DNA of 64,000 nt from Vitrella brassicaformis CCMP3155 (GCA_001179505.1 CDMY01000354.1:1-64000); one strand, 5' to 3'. Shown: positions 24,114 through 61,263, counted from the first letter of the stretch. Program-made: numbers and translations. Notes: generated by a model not told the origin, from the sequence alone.

Positions 24114-24152
<39 letters not shown>

Positions 24153-25814: not shown

Positions 25815-26034
25815 GCTCGTATTGGTACAACACGACGATGCTGCAGTGACCACCAGCCCGGGAGACGCACAGATCTTGCTTGAAATCAGCTGCTCATGCT
25901 CATACACAGCTAGTGCGTCAAGCAGGAACCCGGCTGCAGCACCAAATTCAGCAATTCTGTCACCTGTGGCGAGCTTTCCAAAGGCGTGTTTTCTTCCCCC
26001 TTCTCTCTCACGGCTGCCTTCTCAATCTCCCGCA

Positions 26035-35971: not shown

Positions 35972-36271
35972 NNNNNNNNNNNNNNNNNNNNNNNNNNNNN
36001 NNNNNNNNNNNNNNNNNNNNNNNNNNNNNNNNNNNNNNNNNNNNNNNNNNNNNNNNNNNNNNNNNNNNNNNNNNNNNNNNNNNNNNNNNNNNNNNNNNNN
36101 NNNNNNNNNNNNNNNNNNNNNNNNNNNNNNNNNNNNNNNNNNNNNNNNNNNNNNNNNNNNNNNNNNNNNNNNNNNNNNNNNNNNNNNNNNNNNNNNNNNN
36201 NNNNNNNNNNNNNNNNNNNNNNNNNNNNNNNNNNNNNNNNNNNNNNNNNNNNNNNNNNNNNNNNNNNNNNN
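35972..36271. other. Assembly gap (300 N) after a poly-C run; similar gaps at 37012-37311 and 57691-57990
   Basis: Each run is exactly 300 N and borders a C or G homopolymer, consistent with placeholder gaps. Confidence 0.95.
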
Positions 36272-40241: not shown

Positions 40242-40619
40242 ATGGCATTGCCTCTTGTGGCGCCCTCGTGGCTGACGTGGCCCGAGAGCGAGACCAGCAA
40301 GCGCAACTTCATCGACGTCATCGACGGCCACCTCATCGGCGATGGGCTGCTGTCCCCCGCTGCAGAGCACCCAGAGGAGATGGCTGAGTACCAGACCATC
40401 ATTCGCAACATTCTGCGGCTGTTCCAAGCGCCCCAGGGGCTGGACGGCGTGACGGTGTTTGAGGAGATCGTGCACAAGTTCCGGTTTCAGGAGGACAGCT
40501 ACCACAACCAGTATGAGGACATCGCATACTCGCTCATTTCCATCGCACTCAGAGACCACCCTCCCACCACCGAGGTGCGGTTGGTGCGTCCACACACAAG
40601 GCGTCAACACTCGCGGCCA

Positions 40620-40650
<31 letters not shown>

Positions 40651-43600
40651 GTGTGTGGGTGGTTGGTCAGGTGACGCGTGCGATGCGCGACAGGGGGTTC
40701 ACTCGGCTGGAGGAGTACGTGCTGTATCGGTTCCACTGGAAGCTCTTCAAGAACTACCGCAGGTGGTGCCCCTACGTCGGCGTCAAACCGTTCCCGTGGG
40801 GCGAGGGCAGGGCCAAGCCAAAGAAAAGGACCTCGGCAGCCGTGGCCTACGAGAAACACAAGGAGAAGCAGAGGAAGAACCCAAAGACGCTCCTGAGTAA
40901 GAAAGAAAGACGTCTTGGGGCGTGTATGTGTGTATGTGTACGTGTGTGCGTGTCGCTTCGTTCAGTGCTGATGGCCCGCGAGATAGCGTTGTGGAAGCTG
41001 CTGTGGGGCGAGTCGGCGAACCTGCGTCACTGCCCCGAGATGCTGCTGTTCATCTTCCACTGGATGGTCAAGAGCTGGGACGACGTCGAGCCCCACAAGA
41101 TGCCCGCCTACATCGAGACCATCAGCCCGGTCATCAACATGTTCTGGGAAGAGATGCGGTGCGTGGACATGCACCTACCTGTGGGCGTGAGCTGCCTGCA
41201 CCCAAATGTGTGTCTGCCGATTTGTCCGTCAGTCGTGCCTCTGGCGACCACCCCGTCAAGATGAACTACGAGGACTTCAACGAAATATTTCACAAGGCCC
41301 CGTTGGTGCACAGGTGGCTGGGCGTGGTGGGCAGGGCCGGCCTGGGCGGCGTGTGGAAGGGCAACCTCATCGCCGTCATCAGGATGGAGACGCAGTCGCG
41401 CCAGCTCGTCCATATACACCCACCCAGAGGGCGGAGGAAGACCTTCATCGAGCAGCGGAGCTACCTGCATGTAAGTGGGTGGGTGGGGGAGGGAGGGAGG
41501 GAGGGAGGGAGGCAGGGACGGGTGCGTGCGAGGCTTGGGTGTAAGTGTTGCACATACATGTTATGCGCTCATTCGTTCGTCTCGTCGACAGTTCTTCCGC
41601 ACCTGGTGGCGGTTCTACCACGCCCACCTGGTCACCCTTCTCATTCTGATGGCGTTCCGCGCACGGCAAAAAGGTCGGTGAGTGCCACACCACACCACAC
41701 CGCAATTCCGACCGTCTGTGTGTGTGTTGTGTGGGGTGATCAGGGTGGGACTGGGATGGTTGGTGGGGCATGGTGGCGATGGGGTCCTCTGGAGGCGGGG
41801 TCGTTCGCGAGATGCTGGACATCTTCTTCTACTGGCTGGCGCCCATGCCCTTCCTGCAGCGGGCCTACGACGTCATCGAGAACATGAGGCGGCTCAACTG
41901 GTACCCTACCCCATCTAGTCCACACAGCCATTCATTCTCTTCTCGCCATGGTGTGTGTGGTGTGCAGGTGGGCTCGTCAAGGCATGGCGGCCGTCCGGTG
42001 GGGGTTCTTCCTGGCCGCCGTGTACGTCAGGCACACGAGCCCCAGTGGCCTGAGCGACCCCCTCCTGCAGCCGACAGGGTACATCTGCGGCGGCTACCTC
42101 GTTTTCTACGCTGCCCACGGGCTGTCGTACTTTCTCATCCGTGCGCGGAGGGCCGTGCGGTGCTGGCGCAGGAACCCTTCCAACTGGAGCTCTCACGCGA
42201 CGTACTATGGAAACGCCACCATGCTCAGCGACGAGTACAGACACTTGGTGGGCGTCGAGGGTGGGCGGGTGGGTCGGTGGGGGCTGGAAGGTGGCCGTGC
42301 ACAGTGCGTTGGTGTGTGCGCGTGTGTGTGTGTGTGTGTGCAGGCGGCGTATGGGCTGTTTTGGGCGCCGATTATTGTGTCGAAGCTGTACATGACCTAC
42401 ACCTTTCTGGTCAGCTCCTTCATGGAGTTTCTGGAGCTCGTCAACAGCTCGGACGGAGAGCCGCTCACGTGCGCACACACCTACCACCACAGACGCAGAC
42501 ACAGACACAAGACACACGGACTGTAGCAGAGTATGTGTGCCCGGAGTGGTGATGCCTTGGTGTGTCGGCTCGCCTCCTTCTTTGCAGGTATCAGTTTCTG
42601 TGGTTTCGTTTTGTGGACATGCCCAAGGTGACGCTGTTCATTTACTACGTGCCACCCATGTTCCTGCTCTTTTTCTACGATATCATGGTCAGCCAGTCAG
42701 GCGCCGACAGACCGGCCGAACGACCTGTGTGTGTGTGTGTGTGGTCAGTTTTACTTTTCGATATTCCAATCTTTTGTCAGCTGGCTCATTGGATGGTTCA
42801 GGGGGGTAAGTGTTAGCCAGTGAGTCCGACAGCGGAACAGACAGGCAGGCGAGGGCAGCTGCTTGTGTGCATGTACCTCTTTCTTCGTGTGTGTGTGTCA
42901 GATCGGCTTCATCCACAACCTTTCGGTTATCCAAAAGGTCTTCCCTCTGCTGCCAGTACAGGTGGGCCCCCACTCTCCCACCCTCCGTGACGCACACACA
43001 CACATCCATCCATCCATCCATGTGTCTGTTGTGCCTGTGTGTTCCTGGTTGGTTGGTTGGTTGATGCGTGTGCAGTACGACCGTCTGCTGTCCGAAGATG
43101 CGGGCGGTTCCCTCCACGGCCTGCAGCTCCCCACGTCGCCCTCGCCCAACGCCAATGGCTCCGGGCTCGACTGGCTGCTGCATTGCATCATGTGCTGCCT
43201 CTGCTGCGGCGTGTTCCGACGGAAGCAGCGGATGAAGGTTACGCCCAAGTCTTACTTCAGGTATGTCATGTCAGCCACGCACACAGCACAGATGACATTG
43301 CTGGTGGTGGGGGTGCGATGGGCGTCAGGTCTCACTCGCGGCCAAAGTACGCTCACCCGCTGCGGAAAACGTCCCGGCAATCGTCCCGCCCCACCCCGAC
43401 CTCGAACATGGCCCTGCCCCTCCCCCCGACCAACACCCGCAACACAGACACATCAGACCATCACAGGAAAGCCGCCAATGCGTCGGTGGCTGTGGATGAA
43501 GACACAGCTGCTGCTGATGGTACTGCTGGTGAGACCCTCACCAGCGTGCTCATCCGCCCCTCTCTGCCCCTCCCGACATCCACGTACACCTCCGCCCCTC

Positions 43601-46600
43601 CCTCGACATGCAGGCGGCGCACCCTGCCTTTGCTGCACGCACAAGGGCCCAACGCGGAGGACAGCGAGTCAGATTATTCCCCGCGGCCCACGGCGGCTTG
43701 CGGTGCCACCGGCGACCCATTCGGCCCTGCTGCTCACGCCGGTCATACTGGCGGCCTCGCCAATGCGCCGTGTCGGAGGAAGGAGCCTGCAGACGTGCTG
43801 GGGGGTGGTGGGTCTTGGTGGCACCGTGAGATCGCTGCCGTGTATGACAACACCGTCCCGGCAGAGACTGTCGAGCACCAAATCCGAAGGTGGGCGGGTG
43901 GGTGGGTGGGTGGTCGTGTGTGTGACGCAGTTGTCCGACCCATTCATTGATTGCTCAGGTTTGGTTTTCTGTGGAACGAGGTGGTTGAGTCATGGCGCGA
44001 GGAGGATTCCATCGACAACGCCGAGAGGTGCAAGCTGCAGTTCAACGAGCTGCCGGCAATACACTTCAAAGACATCAGTGTGAGTACTCGCACACAGGAG
44101 AGAGAGACGCAAGGCCAGGCCATTCACCCTTCCTTCCTTCCTGCAGGAGCTGACCATGGCGAGTTGCCATGAGGAGGGCGATGTGGGCGTGTCGTGGGAT
44201 GGTGAGATCCGGCATCCGGTGTGGGTGTACTGCGACGTCCTCAAGACCTTCCAAAGGGAATGTGAGAAGCACCAGAGCCACGTCAATGACATCTGGGAGG
44301 GGCTGCGGGTGAGTGAGTCAGCGAGTGCCTCTGAGACGCTGTCCATCCCCCCTAATACGCACCCTTCCCTCCCTCCCTCCCTGCCTCCCTCCCTCTGTGT
44401 GTCTTCCTCTCAGGCCCATTATCGCTTCAATGACAACTTCACCCAACTACACCTGCAAGAAGTCTTGGACCTCCCTCCCACATCCACAGCAATCACCACC
44501 ACCAGCAGCAGCCAATGGGCTCTCACAGCCAAGGCCAAAGTCAAGAGAGCCCTCACGAAGGCGGGCGAAGACTTCGTCAGGAGGCACTTCGGCAAGTCCA
44601 CGGTGACCCTGGCCGACCCGCGCAAGGACAGCCACCAGTTTCTGCTGCGGCTGGCGCTGCTGGAGATCTATGAGGCGCTGTGCTTGTACCTGACGAGGTT
44701 CTTCCCCGACGGGGGCAGCATCGCCTTCAAGCTCTGCTCGCTTGTCCGACGGGTGAGTAAGCCGTTTGACGGGCAACACACAGACGGCAACAGATGTCTG
44801 TCTGCATGTCCGTGCTGATCAGGTGGGCCGTGACCCTTTCTGCCTGTGTTTGCTGAATTTGAATGCGGCCAAGGACTTGCAGGCCACCCTGGCGGCCGTC
44901 TTCGCCGCAGCACAGGGCGACAACGCGGTCAAAGTGGAGGAGAGCGGCGTCAGGCTGCTCAAGGCGCTTCAAAAGGTGGCCCTCCCCGCCCTCCTGTCCA
45001 CTCGCGGCTCGCCCGTGTTGGCGTCACGAGGCATGCTGCGGCACTTCCCGGAGCTGGTGGAGTTCCTCGAGGCCGTCGGCGAGACACTCGCCATCAGACA
45101 GTCCCTCAAGTGGTGGGTGGGCAAGAGACCCTCATCCATCCATCCACCCACCCACCCATCCGGCCACTTGGCGTGTGTGTGTTGTTTGTGTCAGTGTGGG
45201 CAAGGCGGACACCCACACCCACACCAACACGCCCATGTCGACTGACGCCTCCTTCCGCTCGTCGAGCGAGACGGCCAGCTGGGACGACACAGAGACAGAG
45301 ACCGAGACCGAGACTGAGACAGGGACAAAGACCGCCCTGGACAGCCTGATGGACCGCGTGGACAGGGACTTCGGCTCCAGCCGGGCCAGTAGTGGGTCCG
45401 ACGTCTTCTACAGCCCACGATACGACACCCCCACCTCCACTTTCTCGTCATCAGAGGCGTCTCCACATGTACCATCATACCCCCCGGTGAGGGACTTCGA
45501 AGCACATGCTCGTCGGCTCGGTGTGGGAGAAAGTGGGACGGCGAGGTACGTATCGCCTGCTGCCGCAACACCGCCACTGCCAGTGGCGAGCACAGAGGCC
45601 TCTGTGGGCAGTGGTGGTGGTGGTGGTGGGGAAAGCGACATGGACGAGTGCGAGTGTGGTGATGCGACTGCTGTCAAAGGCGAGGAGACGGCCCGCGAAG
45701 AAGAGTGGTGGAGCGTAGATGACCTGCAGGTGGGTGGGTGGGTGGGTGATGGCAACGGAGCATGGATGTTTGGTCTGTTGTGTTGTGTTGTGCTGTGTTG
45801 TGTTGTGTTGTGGTTGTGGTTGTGCTGCATTTAGGAAAGGGTTCTGGTGCATCAGCCTCTGAGGTTATCTGATGCGCTGAAGCTCTTCTTCCGCCGGGCC
45901 AACCGCATCCTCACAGCACATGGATACAGACTCAAGACGGGGCTCGCACAGACCAGGTACGCGATCCTCACCCACACCCACACCCACACCCACGCACACG
46001 TTGCATCCCTCTCTGCCGTGTGTGTGGGTGGGTGTGCAGGTTGAAGTATTTCTCGAGCTCGCTGTTCATGGAGATGCCCGAGGCGCCCAGCGTGCAGCGG
46101 ATGGTGTCCATGTGCACATTCACCCCCACATACACGGAGGACGCCATGATGAACGCAGCTGTAACCCACCCAACAGCACTAAATGATGGATGGATGGAGG
46201 GGTGTGTGTGTGTTTGTGTGTGGTGCAGATGCTGAACGAGAAGACGATGGAGGGCGTGTGTCAGTTCGACTTCATCCGCACCATGTACAGCCAGGAGTGG
46301 GCCAACTTCCTGGAGAGGATGGACCCACAGGGGGTGCGATACGACTGGTACCAGCACAGCCAGACACACAGGGGCGTCCTCAGCAAAGACACCAACACTA
46401 TGGCCGCCAAGTAAGGGCGCAGTGATCCATGGACATCCATCCACAGACGTGCCAAAATGCGTCGTGCTGTGTGTGTGTGTGTGTGTGCGTGTGTGTGTGC
46501 GTGTATAGGTTTGAGAAGGACATAGAGGAGTGGGCGTCCAACAGGACGCAGACCCTCTGGCGCACACTGAGGTCCGTCATGTACTACGAACAAGCCTGCA

Positions 46601-49600
46601 GGATGCTGGTCAGTCAGTCAGCCACCCAACACTGCACACACCCATCACCCTGTCTGGCTGTCTGACAGGCGTGGATGGAGTTGCAGGCGCAGCGGGGGCT
46701 GAGGGTGCACCTGTGCCACGACCGCAACCTGCTGTCCTTCGAGCAGAACGAGCGGCTCAACTGGCAGAAGGTCCCCGTCCAGCCAGACACACCGGAGAAG
46801 ATGATAGGTGAGTCAGCGGGTGTGCTAATGGTGGTGCTCCCATTGCCTGCCTGCCTGCCTGCCTGCCTGTCTTCCTGCGTGTCTGGTCTGTAGAGTTCCT
46901 GCGTCGATGGGACCGGTGGCACAAGCACAGGACGTCCACCGACCACAGGCCCTACAATAACGACCCCGTTGCAAAGGTGGGAAGCAGAGCACTCACAGCG
47001 AACTCCCCTCACCTGTCTGTGGGCCCATGTGTGTGTATGCCTTTCCTTTGCTCGTTCATCAGGCGCTGGCAGTGCTGCGGTTCCAGTACGTCTTGACGGC
47101 GCAGACACTGGGCGAGGACCTCAAGGCCCCTCCCTCCAACATCTCCGCCGCCAACCGAGTCCGGTGCATCACCGAGATGTGCAGGCGCTACCCCACGATG
47201 CGCGTGGCGGCCATCGAGAACTGCGACATCGTCCTTCCCTCGGGCAAGGCCAAGACGGCGCGTTGCTCGGTCTTGTACAGGTGGGACGTCAGCCAGCAGC
47301 GGCTGGTGCGGGTGTATAGGATCGTGCTGGGGCTGCTGGAGGGCGCCGCAGGGGCCAGGTCAGAGAGACAGACACAGACACACCATTCGGTGGATGGTGC
47401 GTTTCCGTGTGACTTGAATGCTCTCTCTCTCTCTCTCTGTGCGTGTGTCTGCAGGAATCCTATTGTCGGGGAGGGCAAGAGTGAGAACCAGAACCACGCC
47501 ATCATCTTCACGCGCGGCGAGACCATCCAGGCCATCGACATGAACCAGGAAATGTACCTAGAGGAGGCCCTCAAGCTGCGCAACCTCCTGCAAGAGTTCG
47601 CCAAAGACTCCAAGATGGCCATTATGGGATTCCGCGAGCACGCCATCCTCCCCGGGGCCCTGACGCCCTCCTACCTGGCGAGTGTGCAGCAGACGTGCTT
47701 CACTTCCCACGACGCGCGGGCCTTCCACATGCCCATGCGAGTGCGGTTCCACTACGGCCACCCTGACGTGTTGGACCGGTACCTCGTGCAGACGATGGGC
47801 GGCATGAGCAGGGGTAGCGCCATTATCAACGTGACCGAGGACGTCTACTGCGGCATGAATTACGTCCAGAGAGGATACTCTTCCTCACAAGTCGACTACA
47901 TCATGGTAAATCCAATCGCACCACTACCCACACACATGGATGGATGGATGGATGTGTGTCCGTGTGTGTGTCCAGTGTTCGAAGGGCTGGCCGAACGACC
48001 TGGATCAAGTGGTGGCGTTCATGCGCAAGGTGGCGTGCGGGAGCGCCGAGGCGCAGACGTCCAGCCGGGACGCTTACAGGATGGCTTACGGGATGGACTT
48101 CCTGCGCCTGCTGTCGCTCTTCGCGGCCTTCCCCGGGTGGAACATCCTCAATCCGCTGGGGTTCTTCCTCCTGTGGCTGAGAATGTACTCCCGGATACTC
48201 ATCCACGCCTTCATCGGTGAGAGAGAGCAGGGACGCATGCGTATCCCTCTCTCTGTCCCTCTGTGTGTGCGTGTGTGGTGTGGGTGGGTGGGTGGGTGGG
48301 TGGGTGACACGCTCAGCCTATATCCCTGGGCGGCTGCTGACCTTTATGAAGGGAGAGGATTCTCGCGCGATTGACGGGATGGAAGTGTTCTGGCTGGTCC
48401 TGGTCGTACTCTTCTACCTCAAGTAAATCCGGAGAGGGAGGGAGCTTGTATTGTGTCTCATTCCTGCCTCCACACTGTGTGTGTCCGTGTGGTAGGTACT
48501 GCTCGATGGTTGCTATGGAGAACGGCGTCGGTGCGGGCATCGAGCACCTGTGGTTCCACATCCGGTCGTTGTCTCCCCTACACTACACCTTCACAAGTAA
48601 ACCGTCCACCCATCCAGCCACCCATCCAGCCACACCGACGTGTGTGTGATGTGATGCGGTATGTCTTCCTCTGTCCTCTGTGCAGTCGGCACATGGGCCA
48701 GCAGCTTCGACGAGACGATCCTGTTCGGCCGGGCCAAGTACCTGAATGCTGGCCGGGGGTTTACCGTCAACCACAGAGACCTCATCCACCTCTGGAAGCA
48801 ATACTACTACTCCCACTTCCAAGTCGCCGTGGAGCTGCTGCTCCTGCTCTTCTATCTGCGCGTCAGTCAGTGTTGGAGGGAGAGTGGAGGGAGTGTGGGG
48901 CGTTCGTTGCACGTGTGTGTCACGTGTCGTGTGGGTTTGTGTGTGTGTGTGTTTGTGTGTGTGTGCAGTTTCTGCAGGATATGCACCCGATAAGAGCTGT
49001 GAGCATGTGGTGGCTGTACCTGCTGGCGGGGTCGTTCCTGTACGTGCCGCACCTCTACAACCCCATGGGCCTCTCGTGGGGCCACCTCACCTCCGATATC
49101 ATCACCTTCTCAAAGTGGATGCGGTCAACGGTCAGTGCGCTGCGCTGCGTTTCCATCCTCCCTCCCTCCCCCCCTCACTCGTGTGTGTGTGTGTGTGTGT
49201 GTATATATATCAGGAGAGGCATGACATTGACGAGAGTTGGTACGCCTGGTGGCGGCAGCAGATGGAGTTCCGCAACAGCGCCTCGCCACTCAACAAGGTC
49301 ATCATCTTCACACGCGAGTGGAGGTTCCTGCTCCTAGCCTTCTGCTTCGCCAAAGCAGCCAACTGGTGGGTGCGTCACGGTGCGTTGCACAAAGGAGGCG
49401 AGCGATGCATGGATGGATGGCCACACGGTGTGCAGGCAATGGCATGAGCTGATAAGCCTGAGCATGCCTAAAGGGGGCTGGACGTACGAGAGCGTCGTCA
49501 CGTGGGCCACCAGCCAGGAGGACCTGGAGCGCCTGGCTGAGAAGAGCCCTTTGCTGGCGCCGCTGATCTTCACGGTGCTGCTGGTGGTGGCCATGGGCAT

Positions 49601-50530: not shown

Positions 50531-51960
50531 GCAGCAGTGGCAAAGCGGGGCTGTCGGGCGACACTAGTACTATTCTTATGTTGTCGCTGATGGCGGACGG
50601 TGGCTGTCCCATTTCGCGTCCCATTGCATTACATCGCATGGTGAACACAATAAATAGACAGGCAAACAGCCAGACAGACAGGCAAGTGGATACACAGACA
50701 GACAGACAGACAAACGGAGATAAGCACGATGACATACATACACACATCGGCGCGCAATCGATGGCCGAGACAGGTACGTGACGAAACGTAAACATAATAC
50801 TTACAGAGGCAGCCGGCGCAAAGAGGTCTTTGTGTGTGCGATGGACGCAGGTATACCTACAGGCCGGTGGGTGGACGGACAGGGACAGACGTGTGTATGG
50901 GGGGGAATTTCTGTTGTGGTGTGGTGTGGTGTGGTGCGGTACTCACACGCAGACGAGTGACAGGCCACTAACCCTGAGCTGGTCCAGTTTTGTTAACCAA
51001 AAGGACAGCTAGGCTGGCCGGCATGCCACGCACAATGACTGACTGACTGACTGGTAGGTAGGTAGGTTCGGTGGCTGGCTGGCTGGATGTGGGTGTGGCA
51101 TCTCGTGTGGCATGTCGTTCGTGTCATGTGTGCAGCAACTGATTGTGAACACGGCTGGCGTGTCTCAATATAGCCGCCCTACCTGCCTGCCTGCCTGCCT
51201 GCCTGAGTCTGTGCGTCATATTTGTCTCGGTCGCCTCGACTTACTGCCCCTGTTCTAGCTGGGAAGCGTGTGTGACCGATTGGTACATTCGTGTCTTCAT
51301 ACTACCTGCACATGTACACGTTTGCCATCCATCAACCAACCACTGTCCCCTGACGCACTCCGTCACGTATTGAGCTTAAATCCCACCCACCCCCCGTCTA
51401 TCTTTTTGGTGCAGCAGCGAGGCCTTCAAGCTGTGGAGGCCGAGATCTCTGCCGTCATGACCCAGATCTCCACCAGCATCGCCACAACTCCCGACAGCAC
51501 TTCGCAGCAACTCGTTAAAACGGCACAACCAACTACCACGTGTCTCCCAGAGAGAGCCACACACAAGTGCACGCGTTGCTGCACACCGATCCACAGCCCA
51601 ACACACAGCCCACACTGAAACTGTCTGACGCTCATCCATCCCAAGAAGCTTAAGGGTACGTTGACCGACCTGCCGCAGCATCCGTCAGACATGCCAATGC
51701 GAAACACTGTACATCCACTAGCTAGCCACACCCGCAGAGCAGTGAGTGCAACTGTAGGCCGTAACTTTTGTACATCGACACACGCCAGCAGAAAATACGT
51801 ACACACAGGCAGTCTCTCTTTGGCATTCCCAAAACCGTCAGACAAACAAGCGACGACCGCCAGAATTAAAATTCCGAACAAACAAGCCAGTCACCGGGAA
51901 AAGGCCAATCACGAATGCGCCTATGTGTGCGTATACATGACCTTAAGCTGTGCCGTCATA

Positions 51961-53919
51961 TCAAGACATTGACTGAATGAAACTGGGTCTATGGACCATT
52001 TCGCGATAAATCGCCGTCACCGCCTCATTCCGATCGAGACACCAGTCCACATCCCCGCCCACTATGGGTTCATCTTTGTGTATGTTGAACCAGAAGACCG
52101 CTGATATCAGGGGGAAGTCATGCAGACTGCCATAGACCTGCTGCAGCCAGGCCGACTTGATGTCAATCTGCAGAAGTGCATGAGCATGATGACAGAAAGA
52201 ACGGATTAGCATCCGCCATCACGTGTGTACCTCAGATGCGCCTGCGCGGCCAGTGTGGAAAAGCGACGACGTTTCAGAGACCATCATCGGCTTGTTCAGC
52301 CGAGCAGCAACCTCGTTGTAGAATTGGCCAACAGCACGGTAAAATTTTCCTCGCTGAGAGACAGAGACAGAGAGAGAGAGAGAGAGAGAGAGGGGAAAAC
52401 AAGAGAAAAGGATGAAGATCACATTTCCACTAATACGGACTTGCGCTACCTACCTGTGGAATGACGTTGCACCCAAGTGCTCCTGCGCTGTCACAATCGC
52501 CCCAATGATAATAACTGCAACAGCCGACAGGCATGCAAGCAGTGAGAGTGACGAACGAAGGGTCAGCGTCAGGGAGGGCACTCTCACCTCATACCAATCC
52601 AATCAACCTAAACACACAGGCTGACTATCTCTTTTTCTCACTGCATGTGGCAGCTCTCTGTCTCTCACCGTGTCTGACGAGTTGGGGAAGAACTGCCAGT
52701 AGGGGTCTTCGCGGCCAACACTCGGATTGGAGTACTTCTCTCCTGGCCATGGAAAGCCTAATCTGTTCGTGCAGCCCACTCAGATAGACGACGAGTGGAC
52801 GAAAGACATCCAGAGGTGTCTCTGTTGACGTACTCGTAATTGGGCGTCCACACCATCGCGACGTGTGTCGTTCGAGCCTGCGTGACGAGCAGAATCCAGG
52901 ACGGGAGTCGTGAAGGTAGAGATGGGACCCCACCTTGATGATTCGCGAGAACTCCTCAAACTTGCTCTTGTAGAGGGCGGGTTGCTGACCCCTGATTGAT
53001 CGATCGACGGAACGGAGAGACAGAATCAGTTTGCGCGTGCCCTGTGATCCGATCAGTGCCTCGCTCACCATGAGTACCAACTGAAAAAACAAGAATGCCA
53101 CCAAAAAGAAGCCGCAGATGTAACCTTCATTTGCCGAGCGGCTGCCGTGGGCTGCGTTGCGTACCTTCCGTTCATCTCGTGATTGAAACGGAGCCAGATG
53201 GGTACTGAGTCCGACCAAATGTTGAGGAAGTCTGCGAAATCATTGATTTGCTGGACGCTGTATGAGTGCAGCCCTACAACAAGCACACACAATGGGCCGC
53301 CGCGGGGCTTTCATGTGCCAGGCGTACCGCCGTCTGTCATGACGGTCAGCGCGGCCATCGCACCGTTCTCCTTGCACTCGGTAAGAAAGTCTGAGACGGA
53401 CGCATGTTCTTCGTGAGTGTCATTCACCGCCTCGGGGAACTTGATGAAGTGCAAAAATGCCGCATGCCTGCGCCGTGCTCATACACGCTTCTCATCCTCT
53501 CTCTCTCTCTCTCTCTCTCTCTGTGAGTGTGTGTGCCAGGTGTGTGTGATTACCTCACTTGTGTGCGGGCGTTGAAAGCGGATTGTGTCTGTCCCGTTTG
53601 CACCCCACGACAGATACGAACAGCGGGTTGCCATGTGACTGCCCTGCGTACCCACCTCCGGTGGCTGCAGGATGCCTCCCAAGTAGACGCCATTCGCTCC
53701 AATAGCATTCGCTGCAGATGGCGGTCCCACTTGGGCCTGGCCACGCACACCAAAACGACCAGCACCAACAGCAACAATGTCAACAGCGTCGGCGGCCTCA
53801 ACACCATCCAGCGGCGGTGCTGTTGGGACGATGATCGTGTCGCCTTCGTCTTGGCCACGCACGAAAAGCCCCTCGTACCAATAACACAGGAGGAACACAG
53901 GCAGGCAGCGCAGCGACAT
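51961..53919 (-). CDS. Secreted GH26 glycoside hydrolase (copy A, catalytic domain only)
   Basis: Signal peptide MSLRCLPVFLLCYWYEGLFVRG; GVYLGG; IWLRFNHEMNG.WYSWGQQP (acid/base Glu); AMVWTPN; VDWIGMSYH; KPMMVSETS (nucleophile Glu); AVFWFNIHKDE. Confidence 0.88.
53741..53841. repeat. 101-bp inverted repeat, partner at 54251-54351, inside the N-termini of the two GH26 genes
   Basis: 8 mismatches in 101 nt by manual alignment (DTIIVPTAPP.DGVEAADA.D.VAV.AGRFGVRG). Confidence 0.9.
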
Positions 53920-54001
53920 CGCGCAGAAGGCTACCGAGCGTGCCCAAATATACAGAATGCCTTCCAACGCCTGAATAACGGCAGAGGAGGCCGCAGACAG
54001 A

Positions 54002-57000
54002 ATGGCGTCCGCCGCCAGGAGAGCAGGCGCTCTTCTGTTGACGCCCGCTCTGCTGACGCTATGCTGGGCCCTCCCGCGGCCCCTCGTCACCACCGACACC
54101 ATGCTCAGCGACGAACCCCGCCCTACTGTGCGCGGCCTCCAGAGCAACTCAAGCAGCAACTCAAGCAGCAACTCAAGCATCTCTACGTGCACCGGCAACT
54201 GCACCACAAAGGGGCCCGTCGCCGCTGCTGCTGATGCTGGCAGCACCGAAGACACGATCATCGTCCCAACAGCACCGCCACCGGATGGTGTTGAGGCCGC
54301 CGATGCTATTGACGCTGTTGCTGTTGATGCTGGTCGTTTTGGTGTACGTGGTGATGCCGCCGCCGCCGCCGCCGCCGCTGCCGCTGCTGCTGGTGATGGT
54401 GCTGTGGACGATAGGTACAGGGGATGGGGAAAGAAGATGCGCGCCCACCGTCCCGTCCCGGGCCCAGGGGTTTACCTAGGAGCCACCTTAGCGGTCAGAC
54501 AGAGAGGGAGGGGGCGCACAGACAGACAGACAGGCAGAGAGAGCGGATGGTGGTGCGCTGTGTGTCGTGTATGGTGTGTGTCAGGGTGCCCAGCCGATGT
54601 TGGCCTTCAACCAGCGCACGGGTATCCACCATGCGGCCTTCATGCAGTTCATCAGCTTCCCAAATGTCACGACCGACGAGAATAAACTCAGAGAGGTAAT
54701 CCACCGACCACACGCAAAGCAGCTCTTCCCTCCCCCGAACACACCAATGCCCATCTGTCTGCAGCTGGTGAAGTTCATGCGCGAGTGTCGCGAGAACAAG
54801 GCCATGGCAATGTTGACCCTCCAGACGCCCAAGGGTCTCGATTCGTACACGCGCAAGCACGTGAACGACTTTGCTCTCATCCTCAACACCTGGAAAGACG
54901 TGCCGGTCTTCCTCCGATGGAACCATGAGATGAACGGCAGGTGATCAACGGTTCCATCGGAGGCAATTGATGTCTCTCTCTCTCTCTCTCTCTCTCCACT
55001 CATTCTCTGGGCGCGCGGATGTGTGTAGCTGGAATTCGTGGGGCCAGCAACCTGAGCTGTACAAGACCAAATGGGAGGAATTTGCATCTGTCATGCGGGT
55101 AAGAAAGGGAGATAGATGGCATACGCGCTGGCTTCTGTTCGTTCATTCGCTGTGCTGTGCGTGTGTCCTTCCTTATGCGCTTAACAGAGGCTCGCCCAGC
55201 AAGTGGTAAACAAGGGATGGACACTTCTCACATACACTTGACTTACATGTGAATGTGAATGTCGTCTATGCGTGTGTCGATTACCAGGCGATGGTGTGGA
55301 CGCCCAACCAGGAATGGGTAAGAAAGGGAGATGGACGGCACACGCGCTGGCTTCTGTTCGTTGCTGGCTTCTGTTCGTTCATATGCTGTGCTGTGCTGTG
55401 CTGTGCGTGTTCCCAGGGTTTCCCTTGGAAAGGCGGACCACACTACAATGCGTAACCACCCGCCCGCCCACCCACCCAGACACGCCATGCAACACGGTTG
55501 TCTTATGTCTCCTCTTGTGTCACTTAAAAACTGCTGTCAGTTCAATCGACCACTACGATCCGTACATGCAGTTTCTGCCCAACCCAGCGCTGATCGACTG
55601 GATCGGCATCTCCTACTTTCACCTCGGCCACGAAGTCCGCGGCAGCCGACTTATCCCAGGCAACAACATCGTCCCACTCCCGCACTCCTTCTTCCCGCCC
55701 ATTGAGGAGTTCTACAGGTTCGCCGAGAAGCTCAACGAGCGCCTGGCCGAGGGCGAGGGACGGCCCCCGCGGCTGCCGGTGCTGATCGCCGAGACAGGCG
55801 CGATGTGGAACGTGGATGGCCCCGTGAACAAGATGTATGGGAAGAGTACCTCTGGGAGTGTGTCGACCAAGAAGCGGGCGTTGGTGGCGCGGGAGGATGA
55901 AGACTACAACTGCACAAATGAGGGTGTCACCGAGGTGAGTGCGAACACGCACGGCCGCACTCGGGGTGTGTGTGTGTGTGTTTAGTACGAGGTGAAGCGT
56001 ATGTGGATAGACGAGGTATACGATATCGACGACAAAGGCAAGAACCTCAAAAGGGACTTCCCGCTGATACGTGAGACGTACACGGACGTTTGCGCGAACA
56101 GTGAAATGCTCAACTCATGCATGTCTCGTTTCGTTATGCCGCTTACATTTTGTATGATAAACCTTAGGGGCGATCTTCTGGTTCAACGTCGCAAAACACG
56201 AACCTAGTCGGCGCCCACCCATTCACCCACCCACGTCTGTCTGTCTGTTTGTCTGTCTGTCTCCCTGTTCAGGTTTCGGTGGTATCTACGCCGATTGGCG
56301 TCTGGACGTGCAGCCGGCCGTCGCGATGTTCTATCGCAAACAGGTCAAGGACGACTATTTCCTACAGTACGCCGTCATCCCCCCAAACGCCGACCCGCCG
56401 CCCCTCCCCGCCCCCAACCACACGTTACTCACCAAGGGCACAAGGGACATCTCCTTCCTGGACCGGCTGCGTGTGTGCAACGCGCACCCACATGAGGGGA
56501 AAGGGTTCCATATCCGCCATCGGTCCACACGGCTGACCAGGAGTGGTGGCCCGTTGGGTTACAAGCGCTGCAGGGACTTCGAGACGAAACTTACAAGAGG
56601 AGACGGAATCGAATTCACCCTTGATGGTACGCCGACCAATAGACACCCAAGAGGGAGGAAAAACAAACACATTTGTGTGTGCGTAGATGGGGGGAGGGGG
56701 GCGTTCTATGTGTCCGAGCTGCCGCCTGCTGAGGGGCTGTTGCTGCTGGTCGTCTACGGGCGTGATAGCTTCTCCGCGGCAAACCTGCTTGGATCACAGA
56801 TCGCCGTCATAGACGCTTACAAGGTCTCTCTCACACAACGCACACAGATGTGTGCAATGTGTTTCACTCACCGTATGTGCGTGCGTGTGTGTGCAGGGCG
56901 GCGCAGAAGCCCATTTGTCGATATTCGACGACTATCCTGATTCAACAAGGTCCCGGTCTGAGGAGCTGAGATTCGACACTGTCGTGGCCGTCAACGAGGG

Positions 57001-57462
57001 ACCATACAGGCACGCACCACGGGGCACAAGGAAGAAGGACGTCAGGCGGGCACGGTACATGAATGGATGGATTCTGTGTGAGTGTGCAGGGCCGTGTTGA
57101 GCAGTGACGACGGCGAAGAGATCGACAGCGCCCCGATTGTGTGCCGGAAAGAGTAAGGGTGGATGGGAAGGAATGAAATGGCACGCCAATCCAACACATG
57201 CGCTGTGCACATGCAGTGATTCGTATGTGGTCATCCGAGTGGGAGCCGAGCCTTCGCAATCCGGCGGCAAAAGATACCCTCAGGTGTGTACAAGTGGTAG
57301 GGTGGATGCCTTGTGTCCACGTGTCGATCGTTCTTTCAGGAGCTGTTGGTCTATCCCCCGCCCCTCCCGCCTCCACGCACCGGAGCAGCCACCACCACGG
57401 CACCGCCGGCATTGGCCGTATCGTTGTCCCTGCTGCTGGCTGTGCTCGTCAGCGCTGATTGA
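54002..57462 (+). CDS. Secreted GH26 glycoside hydrolase (copy B) with C-terminal extra domain and GPI-anchor-like tail; start codon uncertain
   Basis: Signal peptide MASAARRAGALLLTPALLTLCWA; GVYLGA; VFLRWNHEMNG.WNSWGQQP; AMVWTPN; IDWIGISYF; PVLIAETGA; FWFN; then RLRVCNAHP domain; tail TGAATTTAPPALAVSLSLLLAVLVSAD*. Confidence 0.88.
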
Positions 57463-58425
57463 TTCCACTGCTCCTTTGCATACGGACCCCCCACTCCGCC
57501 CTCAGAGATGTAAATTAGCCATTGCGCATGCGCGGGGGTAGTTAGCAATGGGTAGTTAGGTCTTTGTCGTCAGGTATGGATGAGCTGATGGTAATTCAAG
57601 TGATAGGAAGTTTGGCGCTGGAGAATGAGCCTTTAATTAGTTGTACGCTGGTGTGCTGGTTGATGTGTCTGAGGGGGGGGGGGGGGGGGGNNNNNNNNNN
57701 NNNNNNNNNNNNNNNNNNNNNNNNNNNNNNNNNNNNNNNNNNNNNNNNNNNNNNNNNNNNNNNNNNNNNNNNNNNNNNNNNNNNNNNNNNNNNNNNNNNN
57801 NNNNNNNNNNNNNNNNNNNNNNNNNNNNNNNNNNNNNNNNNNNNNNNNNNNNNNNNNNNNNNNNNNNNNNNNNNNNNNNNNNNNNNNNNNNNNNNNNNNN
57901 NNNNNNNNNNNNNNNNNNNNNNNNNNNNNNNNNNNNNNNNNNNNNNNNNNNNNNNNNNNNNNNNNNNNNNNNNNNNNNNNNNNNNNNNNNGGGGGGGGGG
58001 GGGGGGGGTGATCGCATGCGAGAGTGAGTAGCATTTGGCAGCATTGCAAGCAAGGCCAACTCTTTTTCGACATGGCATAGTGTCATTGTTGCTATCATGC
58101 TACAGTCCAGTCCGCGTAAGTGGCTCACCGTATATATACATACGTAGCGTACGTGGGTCAGCCTGACACAGTCTGATACATACTCTTTCTCCCGACTCTC
58201 TTTCCCTGCCTCCAAAGCACCCACCCTCTCACGATGAGAGCATCAATCAGCCACGGAAGAGGAATCACTTACGCGGTCTGGACTGTACATTCCTCTTCCG
58301 TGGACCTGCTGGGCGCTAGTGGCCGTCGACAAGTACAGGGGTAGAGATAGGGGACGATCTTAGCTTCCGGCCAGGAACGGTCGTTATTTGCACATTGTGC
58401 AATTCCATCATCGCACATACGCCGG

Positions 58426-61263
58426 ATGCGGCTGCGTAGTTTTGTAAGTGTAGCCGTGCCTGCCCACATGTTCCTGTGTATCTGCACGACCTTACTCTTT
58501 GCTCGTCTGTCCTCGGCCCTCACTGATTTTGAGATCGCCCAGCTCAACACCGACGCGCTGCTGAGGCTGTCCCAGCGTGACGACGACACCAACAATGACG
58601 GTGGAGCTTTCCGCGGCAAGGACAGAAGGCGGCGGCTGGCCCCTCTCGATGACCTCCAGCAGCAGACCCACCTGCTGTACTCCCACCCTCTGTAGGACGC
58701 ACGACGTGGCATCGTCCGGTCAAGGAATTGCCTGTCTGTGTGTATGTTGGTCTCTCTGTCAGGCCCGGCGGCGAGTTCGTCTCGCCATACACCACGATTG
58801 GCTGGCGGGTGGGAGAAATTCGCTATATTGAGGAATGGGGTTTTATGCCGAAGTCAAAGGCGCTGCGGGAGGAGACCATCCACGGCAAGCTGACTCTGAC
58901 CGGCGATGCGTCGGGCGACCACCGTGAAGGAGAGACTCACCTGCTGCGTGACAATGCGACCTTTCTGTTTGTGCCGGCCGTGCCTTTCGACCCTGGGGAG
59001 AGGGTGACTGTTATCGTGGCGGCGGGTGTCGAGACCATCAGTGGGAGGGTGCTGCCCGAGGCAACATGGAGTTTTCAGGTCTCGCACAATGCTCGCGACA
59101 TCTACTTCACCAAGGTCGTCAACCTCGGAGCACCCAATGGCATGTGGGATGCTCCCACGCAGAGGAGTGGCAGCAGCAACAGCAGCGATGCTACCGCGGA
59201 AAAGACTCGACGGCCGCAGAAGGGGTCTGGCGCCTCCCGTCGAGAGCTCCAAGGCGTGAAAAAGCGCGAGTACACATTTCCCGACCACCGCTATCGCACA
59301 CTACCGCAGAACTTCCCCCAAGGGACGGTGGTGGTTTACGGCAACACGTCGCAGCTGGACGAGGGGTACATCTGGACACATAAGATACTCAACGACCCGA
59401 TCTCGCTCAATGGCAGCCTCATCATGCAATCCTGGGGGGATCCCGTATACTTCCACGGTATGCAGATACAGAAGGGGTGTGGGTCAGTGATGGCACAAAG
59501 GTCTGAATGGCCGGCAGTGTGTCTTGGTGTGATATGCGATGTGTCAGAGGGCAACCCGACAGACTTTGCTCCGACGGGAGCAGGCGGAAGCAAGATGCTG
59601 GGCAGAAGCAGCCTCACGGGCATTGTGCTGTGGGGCCAAGATTACAAGCCTGCGGGAGAGATATTCGCGCAGCATGGCCACGGTGAGTGAGTGAATGAGA
59701 TTGTCGACGCCAATACCTCTTCCACCCCTCCCCTCTCTGCATGGTGGTGCAGGAGTGAATTTGGTGGGCAGAGAGCAGGGAGGATGTTCAGTAATGGTCA
59801 TGCAAAGATCTTTGTGTGGTCTTGCCATGAGTGCAGCACGATTACATGATGCTGAAGAATGGCAACGGGCTTCTCTTGCTGTGAGTATTAGTAATACACG
59901 ACCGTCCATCGATCAGCGCTCCTGTTTGTGTGTATGTGCCCTCTCTCAGTGATGACCTGCAAATCCTTGACTCGACGAGGATGCGTCCTGCGCCTGAAGG
60001 GGCGTCGACTAAGACGACGGTGGTGACTCATATTGTACAAGAAGTCACACCAGAAGGTGAGCCGTGGAAGCAAGAGCAGACAGGGACAGGTCAACACATG
60101 AGACGCTTGACTGCCCTCCTCCCCTTCTGTGCATGGCTGCAGGTCACTGCATCTTGGAGTGGCGTATGTGGGACCATCTGCCAGCTGCCTGGCAGGACAC
60201 TGAGGAGGGAGTCCACGACGACAATGGGTGGGACATCGCACATGTCAACAGCGTCGGTGAAGCCCCAGACGGGAACATAGTCGTCTCTTTTCGAAATCTC
60301 AACCAAGTCATCAAAATCGACAGGTACTGTGCGCACCACACGTATACATCAACACACAGCCACACTGTTTTCGTCTGTCTGCTGCCATGCATGTAGGACG
60401 ACTGGGAGGGTTTTGTGGCGACTGGGCGGCAAGCGCAGCTCCTTCAAGATCGAGGGCGACCCCAACGGTCAGTTCGCCGCCCAGCATGACGCAAGAGAGA
60501 TCGACGACAACGTCATCACCCTGTTTGACAACGCATACTGCACTGGAGACGAACACGCACGGGCAATGGACTATGAGCTGAAGTTCGACAATGTTACTGG
60601 GGAGCCGACTGTGGCCAAGATGACGAGTATGTGGAAGAGCGGTGTGACGGCTCTCGCCAAGGGCAGCTACCGGCGGTTGAAGAACGGCAACAGGGCGGTG
60701 TCCCTCGGGTTCGATTTGCTGCCACATGCGTGCAAGGGAGACAGTAAAGGAGCACCGCCGACCAACATTGGAAACCACTTCTATGTGGAGGTGCGTTGTG
60801 CACATAGACCCTCGCATTACACTGCATGAATCGATCGACCTCCCTGCCGCATGTCTGTGTCCGTTGTGTCCGTGCGCAGACTGACCCAGGTGGTGCACTG
60901 CTGATAAGCATGAGTTGGGACTGCGAGTGCCACAGCTACCGGAGCATCAAGGCCCCCTGGACGGGCCGGCCGACCTGGAAGCCCGTCGCTGTGATCGACT
61001 CCAACAACTCCGACAACGTGCTCCAGCTGCACTTCAGCTGGAATGGCGCGACGGAAGTGGCCAGCTGGCGGGTCACACAGGGCGACGGACGCTTCATTTT
61101 CAAGCCCTTCGCGACTGTGGCCAAGACACAATTTGAACATTGGGTACAAATAGAGGCTGGGCGTAGGCAGTGTCTGTACTATCGGGCCGAGGCACTGGAC
61201 GAAAGCGACACAGTGCTGGGCTACACGGATGTCGTGGAGTCTCCAGGCTGTATGAGTGACTGA
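58426..61263 (+). CDS. Secreted aryl-sulfate sulfotransferase (ASST, PAPS-independent type) with N-terminal Ig-like domain
   Basis: Hydrophobic leader; LYSHPLPGGEFVSPYTTI..FLFVPAVPFDPGERVTVIV..WSFQV (Ig-like); HDYMMLKNGNGLL; IVQEVTPEG..VLEWRMWDH; DIAHVNSVGEAPDGNIVVSFRNLNQVIKID; LWRLGGKRSSF; FAAQHDAR; ITLFDNA. Confidence 0.9.

What the first reader, a model, noticed from the sequence alone, without database searches (positions are those of the whole stretch)
40242..61263. Candidate eukaryotic polysaccharide gene cluster: GT48 glucan synthase, two GH26 hydrolases and a secreted aryl-sulfate sulfotransferase
Seen: four consecutive genes are all membrane or secreted glycan-related enzymes (synthase, two signal-peptide GH26s with both catalytic Glu, a signal-peptide ASST), bounded by unrelated genes. 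Established: GT48 makes beta-1,3-glucan; GH26 includes beta-mannanases, beta-1,3-xylanases and lichenases; synthase plus hydrolase pairing is typical of bacterial exopolysaccharide operons; ASST-family enzymes such as Cpz4 can sulfate sugar hydroxyls without PAPS; coccidian oocyst walls contain beta-1,3-glucan. Inference: a co-located module for making, trimming and possibly sulfating a cell or cyst wall glucan in a chromerid. I know of no description of such a cluster but could not search the literature.
Basis: partly seen in the sequence, partly recalled or inferred. Interest (0 to 1): 0.85.

Follow-up and report, generated by a model that had tools for sequence, protein, structure and literature searches.

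The report
Glucan synthase beside bacterial-type glycanases
In the coral-associated alga Vitrella brassicaformis a beta-1,3-glucan synthase gene does sit next to two secreted GH26 glycanase genes and a secreted aryl-sulfotransferase gene. The glycanases descend from bacterial enzymes that often sit beside cellulose-synthase-like genes, but nothing yet shows that the four algal genes work as one unit.

Summary
The window is the first 64 kb of Vitrella brassicaformis contig CDMY01000354.1. It carries four consecutive genes:
- a GT48 glucan synthase (to 50530, 2496 aa);
- GH26-1 (minus strand, 388 aa);
- GH26-2 (plus strand, about 706 aa);
- an aryl-sulfotransferase (ASST; 58426-61263, 738 aa).

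RNA contigs show that both GH26 genes are spliced and transcribed, with 5' ends about 40 nt apart. Both keep the two catalytic Glu. Their closest solved relative, by sequence and by predicted fold, is the lichenase CtLic26A, not a mannanase.

New here: the only eukaryotic relatives found are a third Vitrella copy and one from Piridium. These form one clade inside bacterial GH26s. 18 of the 80 best bacterial loci have a processive, BcsA-like GT2 synthase within 10 kb, so the hydrolase comes from a family that often accompanies a synthase.

The assembly gap (57691-57990) lies between genes and is flanked by poly-G. ASST linkage therefore rests on the scaffold.

Still unsupported: co-regulation, conserved linkage, GH26 activity on the GT48 product, and any role for the ASST (0 of 80 bacterial loci have one). 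The third Vitrella GH26 has no glycan-related neighbours.

Earlier first-stage notes of this scan flagged this same locus. Verdict: partly supported, moderately interesting.

The parts
40242..50530 (+). GT48 (FKS/callose-synthase type) beta-1,3-glucan synthase gene with many introns, annotated product 2496 aa.
   Evidence: Pfam FKS1_dom1 (E 7.7e-9) and Glucan_synthase (E 1.3e-45 on 46961-48217; further exons cover profile positions 11-704). PDB FKS1/GSC2 at E 3.5e-24. Annotated gene end.
51398..53949 (-). GH26-1 mRNA: 1760 nt, 12 exons including 12-nt and 20-nt micro-exons. CDS 51961-53919, 388 aa, equals P0003. Short N-terminal signal-like segment, about 70 disordered residues, then the GH26 barrel. 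Acid/base Glu179 lies in RFNHEMNG and nucleophile Glu306 in MVSETS.
   Evidence: Splice joints in RNA contigs of runs X1, X2 and X8. Model built and identical to the annotated protein. Pfam PF02156. CtLic26A alignment. AF2 model plus Foldseek.
53734..53841 (.). Left arm of a 108-nt inverted repeat (90% complementary), inside exon 1 of GH26-1.
   Evidence: It encodes DTIIVPTAPP..GVEAADA..GRFGVRG, a motif shared only with GH26-2.
53989..57541 (+). GH26-2 mRNA: 2519 nt, 14 exons including an 18-nt micro-exon at 55188-55205 and a GC-AG last intron. CDS runs from 54002 to 57156 (706 aa) if unspliced beyond 57149; the annotation runs to 57462 (768 aa). Layout: signal peptide, low-complexity N-terminal region, GH26 domain (about aa 150-525; NHEMNG and IAETG), then a C-terminal part of about 180 aa that resembles DUF4397.
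   Evidence: Joints in X1 and X8. Model, corrected with the environmental orthologue L088. 41% identity to GH26-1. GC-AG intron. Alternative annotated end. The DUF4397 resemblance is an atlas lead only.
54251..54358 (.). Right arm of the inverted repeat, inside exon 1 of GH26-2.
57691..57990 (.). Assembly gap: a 300-N placeholder flanked on both sides by runs of about 20 G. It lies between the GH26-2 3' UTR and the ASST 5' end.
58426..61263 (+). Secreted bacterial-type aryl-sulfotransferase gene, annotated product 738 aa. Layout: signal-like N-terminus (MRLRSFVSVAVPAHMFLCICTTLLFARLSSA), an Ig-like (Big_5-like) region, then the ASST beta-propeller region.
   Evidence: Pfam PF14269 (E 1.5e-9) and PF05935 (E 9.2e-7) on exons and on the annotated protein. 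PDB 9kf4 'Sulfotransferase' at E 3.4e-7, with the HxNS and QHD histidine motifs kept. The atlas lead for Big_5 plus ASST clusters points to bacteria only.

Best explanation
This is a real neighbourhood of four intron-bearing nuclear genes of Vitrella brassicaformis. Its plausible functional core is the GT48 beta-1,3-glucan synthase plus the two divergently transcribed, secreted and catalytically intact GH26 enzymes.

The GH26 genes were acquired from bacteria before Vitrella and Piridium separated. They come from a clade whose bacterial members often sit next to a processive, cellulose-synthase-like GT2, in the position BcsZ holds in bcs operons.

The most likely mechanism is that the GT48 extrudes a beta-glucan at the plasma membrane, and the secreted GH26s cut or trim a self-made wall or sporangium beta-glucan outside the cell, for remodelling, chain-length control or release of daughter cells. 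The ASST is a secreted neighbour of bacterial type with no demonstrated link to this pair.

Shown here: the gene identities, intact catalytic residues, splicing and transcription of both GH26 genes, their bacterial ancestry, and the synthase association of the bacterial relatives.

Inferred: that the GH26 substrate is the alga's own glucan, that it is the GT48 product, and that the genes are co-regulated.
For: The four genes are consecutive.

The GT48 is confirmed.

GH26-1 equals P0003. It has a Pfam GH26 hit and both catalytic Glu aligned to CtLic26A. The AF2 core has pLDDT above 90. The top Foldseek hit is the lichenase CtLic26A (E 1.7e-16, TM 0.78 by target), followed by a mixed-linkage xylanase, then mannanases and a beta-1,3-xylanase.

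Both GH26 mRNAs are spliced and present in RNA contigs, with 5' ends about 40 nt apart.

Homologues are two other Vitrella copies, Piridium, and otherwise only bacteria. The eukaryotic sequences form one clade (SH-aLRT 96) nested (100) among Riflebacteria, Verrucomicrobia and Desulfobacteraceae GH26s.

18 of 80 bacterial loci, including 4 of the 7 nearest relatives, carry a QxxRW GT2 that scores best as CelA/BcsA within 0.3-8.6 kb. One other locus has a GH16 beside the GH26.
Against: There is no expression data for the GT48 or the ASST. RNA run X2 holds GH26-1 (depth 14.9) but no GH26-2 contig, although contigs cannot prove absence.

The Vitrella paralogue P0004 has no glycan-related neighbour.

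No Chromera homologue appeared in the 214-679 aa range searched, so GT48 organisms do not generally need this GH26.

As far as I know, the known GH26 activities (mannanase, beta-1,3-xylanase, lichenase) do not include hydrolysis of pure beta-1,3-glucan. The bacterial partners are GT2, not GT48. CtLic26A scores only about 6 bits above the mannanases in the profile search.

The genome is compact (median intergenic distance 92 bp, 22,817 genes; PMC4501334). Earlier unchecked notes of this scan list many scattered beta-glucan-type secreted genes in it, so an adjacent GT-GH pair somewhere in the genome is roughly what chance predicts.
Confidence: 0.4

Rival explanations
1. Chance neighbourhood. The four genes are real but function independently. 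The GH26s are secreted enzymes for another glycan: a beta-1,4 or mixed-linkage wall polymer made by a different synthase, or bacterial, host or prey polysaccharide. The head-to-head pair simply lies between a GT48 gene and an ASST gene in a gene-dense genome.
For: - The paralogue P0004 has no glycan-related neighbours.
- GH26-1 and GH26-2 differ in their presence in run X2.
- The four genes lie on alternating strands as separate transcripts.
- The genome is compact, with 22,817 genes (PMC4501334).
- With roughly 100-150 GT and 100 GH genes (my assumption), about one adjacent GT-GH pair is expected by chance.
- An earlier follow-up on another supposed glycan cluster in this genome found such genes common and scattered (an unchecked note).
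- A GH31 gene lies 15 kb upstream without any obvious link.
Against: For the specific pairing of this GH26 locus with a GT48 gene, the expected chance is about 1e-4 to 1e-3 (two GH26 loci, a few GT48 genes, 22,817 genes). The same GH26 clade is also synthase-linked in bacteria at roughly 20 times my rough expectation.
Confidence: 0.4
2. All four genes cooperate: the GT48 makes a wall or cyst beta-1,3-glucan, the GH26s trim it, and the ASST sulfates it outside the cell without PAPS.
For: The genes are adjacent. The ASST is secreted-type and keeps two conserved His motifs. From my own knowledge, not checked here: the ASST-type enzyme Cpz4 sulfates a sugar hydroxyl.
Against: - None of 80 bacterial GH26 loci holds an ASST.
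- The ASST is joined to the rest only across an unresolved gap.
- ASST-type genes occur elsewhere in this genome fused to Apple domains (an unchecked note), so the family is not specific to this locus.
- I know of no sulfated glucan in chromerids, and none turned up in the searches.
- An extracellular aryl-sulfate donor is unexplained.
Confidence: 0.1
3. Landing site for foreign genes. The GH26 pair and the ASST are neighbours because both are bacterial acquisitions that entered, or were retained in, the same tolerant region. Function has nothing to do with it.
For: Outside Vitrella and Piridium, GH26 relatives are bacterial only. The nearest atlas clusters for the ASST N-terminal exon are all bacterial Big_5 plus ASST proteins (a lead only).
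Against: No bacterial GH26 locus carries an ASST, so co-transfer is unsupported. The GH26 acquisition is old: the gene is shared with Piridium, the paralogues are only 41% identical, and there are 11-13 introns. ASST phylogeny was not done.
Confidence: 0.1

Closest known systems
Clostridium thermocellum lichenase CtLic26A (GH26; PDB 2bv9, 2vi0, 2cip)
   Same: Best sequence match (E 3.5e-8) and best fold match (E 1.7e-16, TM 0.78 by target) of GH26-1. Both catalytic Glu align. Same (beta/alpha)8 retaining GH-A architecture.
   Different: Only about 21% identical. The Vitrella enzymes have a signal peptide, a disordered N-terminal region and, in GH26-2, an extra C-terminal domain. Substrate is untested. 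Mannanases score only slightly lower in the profile search.
Bacterial synthase-dependent exopolysaccharide operons such as bcs (BcsA synthase, BcsZ hydrolase, BcsC TPR protein); the hydrolase family varies (GH8 BcsZ, GH5 CcsZ; PMC7710045)
   Same: A processive membrane synthase is encoded next to a secreted endo-glycanase. The bacterial cousins of these GH26s sit in GH26-STAS-TPR-GT2-GH26 or GT2-STAS-GH26 arrangements.
   Different: In Vitrella the synthase is a eukaryotic GT48, not a GT2. The genes are separate, spliced transcripts on alternating strands, not an operon. No TPR, STAS or export partner is present.
Fungal galactosaminogalactan cluster (uge3, gtb3, sph3, ega3, agd3; PMC4817252)
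   Same: A eukaryotic precedent for a co-located synthase, two glycoside hydrolases and a polymer-modifying enzyme that make one extracellular polysaccharide.
   Different: In that cluster co-regulation, conservation across fungi and enzyme activities are all shown. None of these is shown here, and the families differ (GT4-like synthase, GH135, GH114, CE18).
Coccidian oocyst-wall beta-1,3-glucan system (GT48 synthase with GH17 and GH81 hydrolases; PMC3518913)
   Same: A related lineage in which a GT48 makes a structural wall beta-1,3-glucan that is accompanied by secreted glucan hydrolases.
   Different: The hydrolases there are GH17 and GH81, not GH26. No gene clustering or sulfation is reported.

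Membership tests
CAZy GH26 (Pfam PF02156) | Match to the family profile above the curated cut-off | tested here: met
   GH26-1 (P0003): 28.8 bits against a cut-off of 20.2, E 1e-6. A profile of 11 relatives hits 25 GH26 structures at E <= 1e-3. GH26-2 counts only through its 41% identity to GH26-1; its single exons give no hit.
CAZy GH26 (Pfam PF02156) | (beta/alpha)8 barrel of clan GH-A | tested here: met
   AF2 model of GH26-1: mean pLDDT 75.9, with most of the core (residues 73-388) above 85. The 34 best Foldseek matches are all GH26 structures (two of them engineered proteins containing CtLic26A or a mannanase scaffold).
CAZy GH26 (Pfam PF02156) | Catalytic acid/base Glu (HE.NG motif) and nucleophile Glu | tested here: met
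   In GH26-1, E179 and E306 align with the two catalytic-motif Glu of CtLic26A and are invariant in 11 relatives. GH26-2 keeps NHEMNG and IAETG.
CAZy GH26 (Pfam PF02156) | Hydrolytic activity, and which substrate | not testable with these tools
   Only nearest neighbours are available: a lichenase, a mixed-linkage xylanase, a beta-1,3-xylanase and mannanases.
CAZy GT48 (FKS / callose synthase) | Glucan_synthase (PF02364) and FKS1_dom1 (PF14288) domains, and similarity to solved FKS1 | tested here: met
   (profile positions 11-704 are covered over several exons). FKS1/GSC2 at E 3.5e-24.
CAZy GT48 (FKS / callose synthase) | Product is beta-1,3-glucan | not testable with these tools
   Inferred from the family only.
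Aryl-sulfate sulfotransferase (PF05935 / PF14269) | Profile match | tested here: met
   PF14269 at 38.1 bits (cut-off 27) and PF05935 at 28.6 bits (cut-off 24.2) on exons. Both families are on record for the 738-aa product.
Aryl-sulfate sulfotransferase (PF05935 / PF14269) | Active-site histidines, including the sulfo-histidine | tested here: inconclusive
   Two His motifs (AHVNS and QHD) align with the solved sulfotransferase 9kf4. Mapping onto the catalytic His of E. coli ASST was not possible. No full-length reference was available, because the spliced protein could not be passed to the tools.
Functional polysaccharide gene cluster (bcs-like operon / fungal GAG-like cluster) | Co-regulation of the member genes | tested here: inconclusive
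   Both GH26 mRNAs are present in X1 and X8. X2 holds only GH26-1.
Functional polysaccharide gene cluster (bcs-like operon / fungal GAG-like cluster) | Linkage conserved in relatives or at paralogous loci | tested here: not met
   The Vitrella paralogue P0004 has no glycan-related neighbours. Piridium is known only from a transcriptome. No Chromera homologue was found. The environmental orthologue contig is only 3 kb. A metagenome scan found nothing.
Functional polysaccharide gene cluster (bcs-like operon / fungal GAG-like cluster) | The hydrolase and the modifying enzyme act on the synthase's product | not testable with these tools
   Needs enzyme assays and wall chemistry.

The most novel reading that the evidence does not exclude
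A bacterial, BcsZ-like GH26 taken up by the common ancestor of Vitrella and Piridium has been recruited as the working glucanase partner of a eukaryotic GT48 synthase. Together with a secreted PAPS-independent sulfotransferase it would form a chimeric eukaryotic gene cluster that builds, trims and sulfates a wall or sporangium beta-glucan. It might replace the GH17, GH81 and GH16 copies that earlier, unchecked notes of this scan describe as catalytically dead in this genome.
Probability: 0.1. Interest if true: 0.8.

Novelty: new variant of a known kind. Interest (0 to 1): 0.5.

Why it matters
Gene clusters for making extracellular polysaccharides are routine in bacteria but rare in eukaryotes; the fungal galactosaminogalactan cluster is the main example. 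If the GT48-GH26 pairing is functional, it would be a second, independent case in a close relative of apicomplexan parasites. It would have been assembled by placing a horizontally acquired bacterial 'synthase-companion' hydrolase next to a eukaryotic synthase of a different family. That would give a concrete handle on the unknown wall chemistry of chromerids and on the origin of the glucan-containing oocyst wall.

Independently of Vitrella, the bacterial result is a testable lead for a new class of exopolysaccharide operon in which GH26 takes the place of BcsZ. A large GH26 clade sits beside QxxRW GT2 synthases, with STAS and TPR partners in some loci. I found no description of it.

Tried and rejected
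- Single-exon searches for GH26 gave nothing: Pfam at E up to 10 and PDB phmmer. The one all-library HMMER job, run on the 130-aa nucleophile exon, found only an environmental orthologue fragment and a spurious repeat protein.
- The large ASST exon found nothing in the word-indexed protein search, because the 738-aa product lies outside the length window. I therefore never obtained an id for the ASST, GH26-2 or GT48 proteins and could not fold them or search with them whole.
- My first GH26-2 model, with a 17-nt micro-exon at 55480-55496, was wrong. The environmental orthologue L088 showed that exon 55417-55451 joins 55541 directly, and the missing 18 nt are a micro-exon at 55188-55205.
- 'The head-to-head pair is not a local duplication': the tree groups GH26-1 with P0004 and GH26-2 with Piridium, but an AU test does not reject GH26-1 and GH26-2 as sisters (p 0.41). 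I claim only that the paralogues are old (41% identity).
The laid reads stop at 57149, however, and the annotation continues to a hydrophobic end at 57462. This stays unresolved.
- The literature searches found no paper on this locus, on GH26 in chromerids or on ASST in chromerids. PDB entry 9kf4 could not be traced to a paper.
- The metagenome scan for Vitrella-like contigs with more flanking sequence found nothing.
Full report
**What the window is.** A look-up of the GH26-1 protein placed it on Vitrella brassicaformis CCMP3155 contig CDMY01000354.1 (104,650 bp). Record coordinates equal window coordinates. GC content is about 59% and coding regions are broken by many short introns.

The annotation lists these genes consecutively: GT48 (2496 aa, ending at 50530), GH26-1 (388 aa, minus strand), GH26-2 (annotated 768 aa, 54002-57462) and ASST (738 aa, 58426-61263). 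After them come an unknown 171-aa gene, RPL28e and frataxin. Upstream of the GT48 lies an ORF with no Pfam hit. Further upstream are an IGPS gene and a GH31 alpha-glucosidase gene.

**The gap, tested first.** The N run at 57691-57990 is one of three gaps of exactly 300 N in the window. Runs of about 20 G flank it on both sides. The GH26-2 RNA contig ends near 57541 and the annotated ASST start codon is at 58426, so the gap is intergenic and no reading frame depends on it. It looks like a placeholder for an unreadable poly-G tract. Linkage of the ASST to the other three genes therefore rests on the scaffold.

**Gene identities.**
- GT48: Pfam FKS1_dom1 and Glucan_synthase hit exons from 40.2 to 49.3 kb and cover profile positions 11-704. 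Yeast FKS1/GSC2 are the best solved matches.
- ASST: PF14269 and PF05935 hit separate exons. A solved 'Sulfotransferase' (9kf4) aligns at E 3.4e-7 with two histidine motifs conserved. By language-model features the N-terminal exon resembles bacterial Big_5 plus ASST proteins; this is a lead only.
- GH26: single exons gave no Pfam or PDB hit, so I built the transcripts.

**Transcripts of the GH26 pair.** RNA contigs from three runs gave the splice joints.
- GH26-1 is a 1760-nt, 12-exon mRNA that includes 12-nt and 20-nt micro-exons. Its 388-aa product is identical to the public protein P0003.
- GH26-2 is a 2519-nt, 14-exon mRNA. My first model was wrong in one place. An environmental orthologue (L088, 77% nucleotide identity in exons, introns at the same places) showed the error. 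The corrected model has an 18-nt micro-exon at 55188-55205 and reproduces the contig length exactly.
- Its last intron is GC-AG. If no further intron follows 57149, the protein has 706 aa and ends without a hydrophobic tail. The annotation instead runs to 57462 and would end in a GPI-like tail. This is unresolved.
- The 5' ends of the two RNA contigs lie about 40 nt apart, on opposite strands.

**Are they GH26, and of what kind?**
- P0003 passes the Pfam GH26 cut-off.
- By sequence its best solved relative is the C. thermocellum lichenase CtLic26A (E 3.5e-8). HEMNG and SETS align to that enzyme's HEANG and AEFAS motifs.
- Both Glu are invariant in 11 relatives.
- An AlphaFold model has most of its core above pLDDT 85. 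It matches CtLic26A first (E 1.7e-16), then a mixed-linkage xylanase, then mannanases and a beta-1,3-xylanase.
- GH26-2 is 41% identical to GH26-1 and keeps both motifs.
- The nearest characterised enzymes therefore act on substrates containing beta-1,3 linkages. The margin over mannanases is small in the profile search, and no GH26 known to me cleaves pure beta-1,3-glucan.

**Where the GH26s come from.**
- The protein search found a third Vitrella copy (P0004, 52% identical by BLASTP to GH26-1, on another contig), one from Piridium sociabile, and otherwise only bacterial or metagenomic proteins. No Chromera protein appeared.
- A scan of bacterial genomes found at least 559 related loci.
- In a tree of 92 sequences the four eukaryotic proteins form one clade (SH-aLRT 96). 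That clade is nested (100) with GH26s of Riflebacteria, Verrucomicrobia and Desulfobacteraceae.
- The likeliest history is one old transfer from bacteria, followed by duplications and intron gain.
- The order of the duplications is not resolved. The tree pairs GH26-1 with P0004, but an AU test does not reject GH26-1 and GH26-2 as sisters (p 0.41).

**The new piece of evidence.**
- The closest bacterial relative (P0006) lies in a GH26-STAS-TPR-GT2-GH26 arrangement.
- In Modestobacter the GH26 lies next to STAS and a GT2.
- Across the 80 best bacterial loci, 19 have a related GT2 within 10 kb. 18 of those carry the QxxRW motif of processive beta-glycan synthases, at 0.3-8.6 kb and mostly under 3.5 kb.
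- Four of the seven nearest relatives of the Vitrella clade are among them. Two of the other three have truncated flanks.
- The two GT2s tested, from L003 and Modestobacter, score best as cellulose synthase CelA/BcsA, below the equivalog cut-off.
- By my rough estimate, chance would put such a gene in under 1% of 20-kb windows.
- So this GH26 clade is, in bacteria, often a synthase companion like BcsZ. One further locus has a GH16 next to it.
- I found no paper describing this. Other hydrolase families in that role are known, for example GH5 CcsZ (PMC7710045).

**What this does and does not show for Vitrella.** A hydrolase from a synthase-associated lineage lying next to a glucan synthase is suggestive. 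Several things weigh against a working module:
- The partner here is a GT48, not a GT2.
- The genes are separate transcripts on alternating strands.
- The paralogue P0004 has no glycan-related neighbours.
- One RNA run holds GH26-1 at normal depth but no GH26-2 contig.
- Nothing could be learned about expression of the GT48 or the ASST.
- Synteny in relatives could not be tested.
- Coccidia pair their GT48 with GH17 and GH81 hydrolases (PMC3518913).

On chance: Vitrella has 22,817 genes with a median spacing of 92 bp (PMC4501334). For the specific pairing of a GH26 locus with a GT48 gene, chance is about 1e-4 to 1e-3. For the looser, after-the-fact class of any glycosyltransferase next to any glycoside hydrolase, about one case per genome is expected (my estimate, using assumed family sizes). 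Earlier notes of this scan, which are unchecked, report many scattered beta-glucan-type secreted genes in this genome, and another supposed cluster that a follow-up judged unproven.

**The ASST.** It is a genuine, secreted-looking, bacterial-type enzyme. Nothing links it to glycans:
- No bacterial GH26 locus has one (0 of 80).
- Related genes occur elsewhere in this genome with Apple domains (an unchecked note).
- It is separated from the rest by the gap.

**Verdict.** The closest known analogues are bacterial bcs-type operons and the fungal galactosaminogalactan cluster (PMC4817252). If the pairing is real, this would be a new variant of that kind. Interest 0.5.

Noticed in passing
window 53734-53841 and 54251-54358: A 108-nt inverted repeat (90% complementary) lies inside exon 1 of both GH26 genes, although the proteins are only 41% identical overall. 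The encoded motif (DTIIVPTAPP..GVEAADA..GRFGVRG) is absent from the third Vitrella copy and from Piridium. This points to local gene conversion between the head-to-head paralogues. The 5' ends of the two RNA contigs are about 40 nt apart.
   Followed up: partly
window 54002-57462: The public model of GH26-2 (768 aa) disagrees with the RNA contigs. These give an 18-nt micro-exon at 55188-55205, a GC-AG intron at 57010-57089 and, if no further intron follows, a stop at 57156 (706 aa). The annotated end at 57462 would add a hydrophobic GPI-like tail. The laid reads stop at 57149, so the C-terminus is unresolved.
   Followed up: partly
window 53069-53080 and 52588-52607: GH26-1 has 12-nt and 20-nt micro-exons, both supported by RNA contigs and present in the annotated protein.
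   Followed up: yes
L088 (ENA ERZ893784, contig k147_552419, 3054 nt): An environmental orthologue of GH26-2: 77% nucleotide identity in exons, introns at the same places, GC 56%. This suggests an uncultured relative of Vitrella in that metagenome.
   Followed up: partly
L003 6323-14344; L008, L009, L013; L005 8001-11695: An undescribed bacterial arrangement: GH26-STAS-TPR-GT2(QxxRW)-GH26 in Riflebacteria-like genomes, and GT2-STAS-GH26 with partner-switching regulators in Actinomycetota. It is a candidate new exopolysaccharide system with GH26 in the place of BcsZ.
   Followed up: partly
window 56275-57006: The C-terminal part of GH26-2 (about 180 aa) resembles DUF4397 and AlgF-like beta-sandwich proteins, by language-model features only (score 0.90). 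Pfam does not hit it. It may be a glycan-binding module.
   Followed up: no
window 51150-57149, run X2: The RNA contigs of run X2 hold the whole GH26-1 mRNA (depth 14.9) but none of GH26-2, while X1 and X8 hold both. This may reflect differential use of the shared 40-nt promoter region.
   Followed up: no
window about 21300-26000 (minus strand) and 26548-27387: A GH31 alpha-glucosidase gene (Gal_mutarotas_2 plus the GH31 barrel) and an indole-3-glycerol-phosphate synthase gene lie upstream. The GH31 is another glycan enzyme in the window with no evident link to the locus.
   Followed up: partly
window 35972-36271, 37012-37311, 57691-57990: All three assembly gaps are exactly 300 N. The third is flanked by runs of about 20 G on both sides.
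   Followed up: partly
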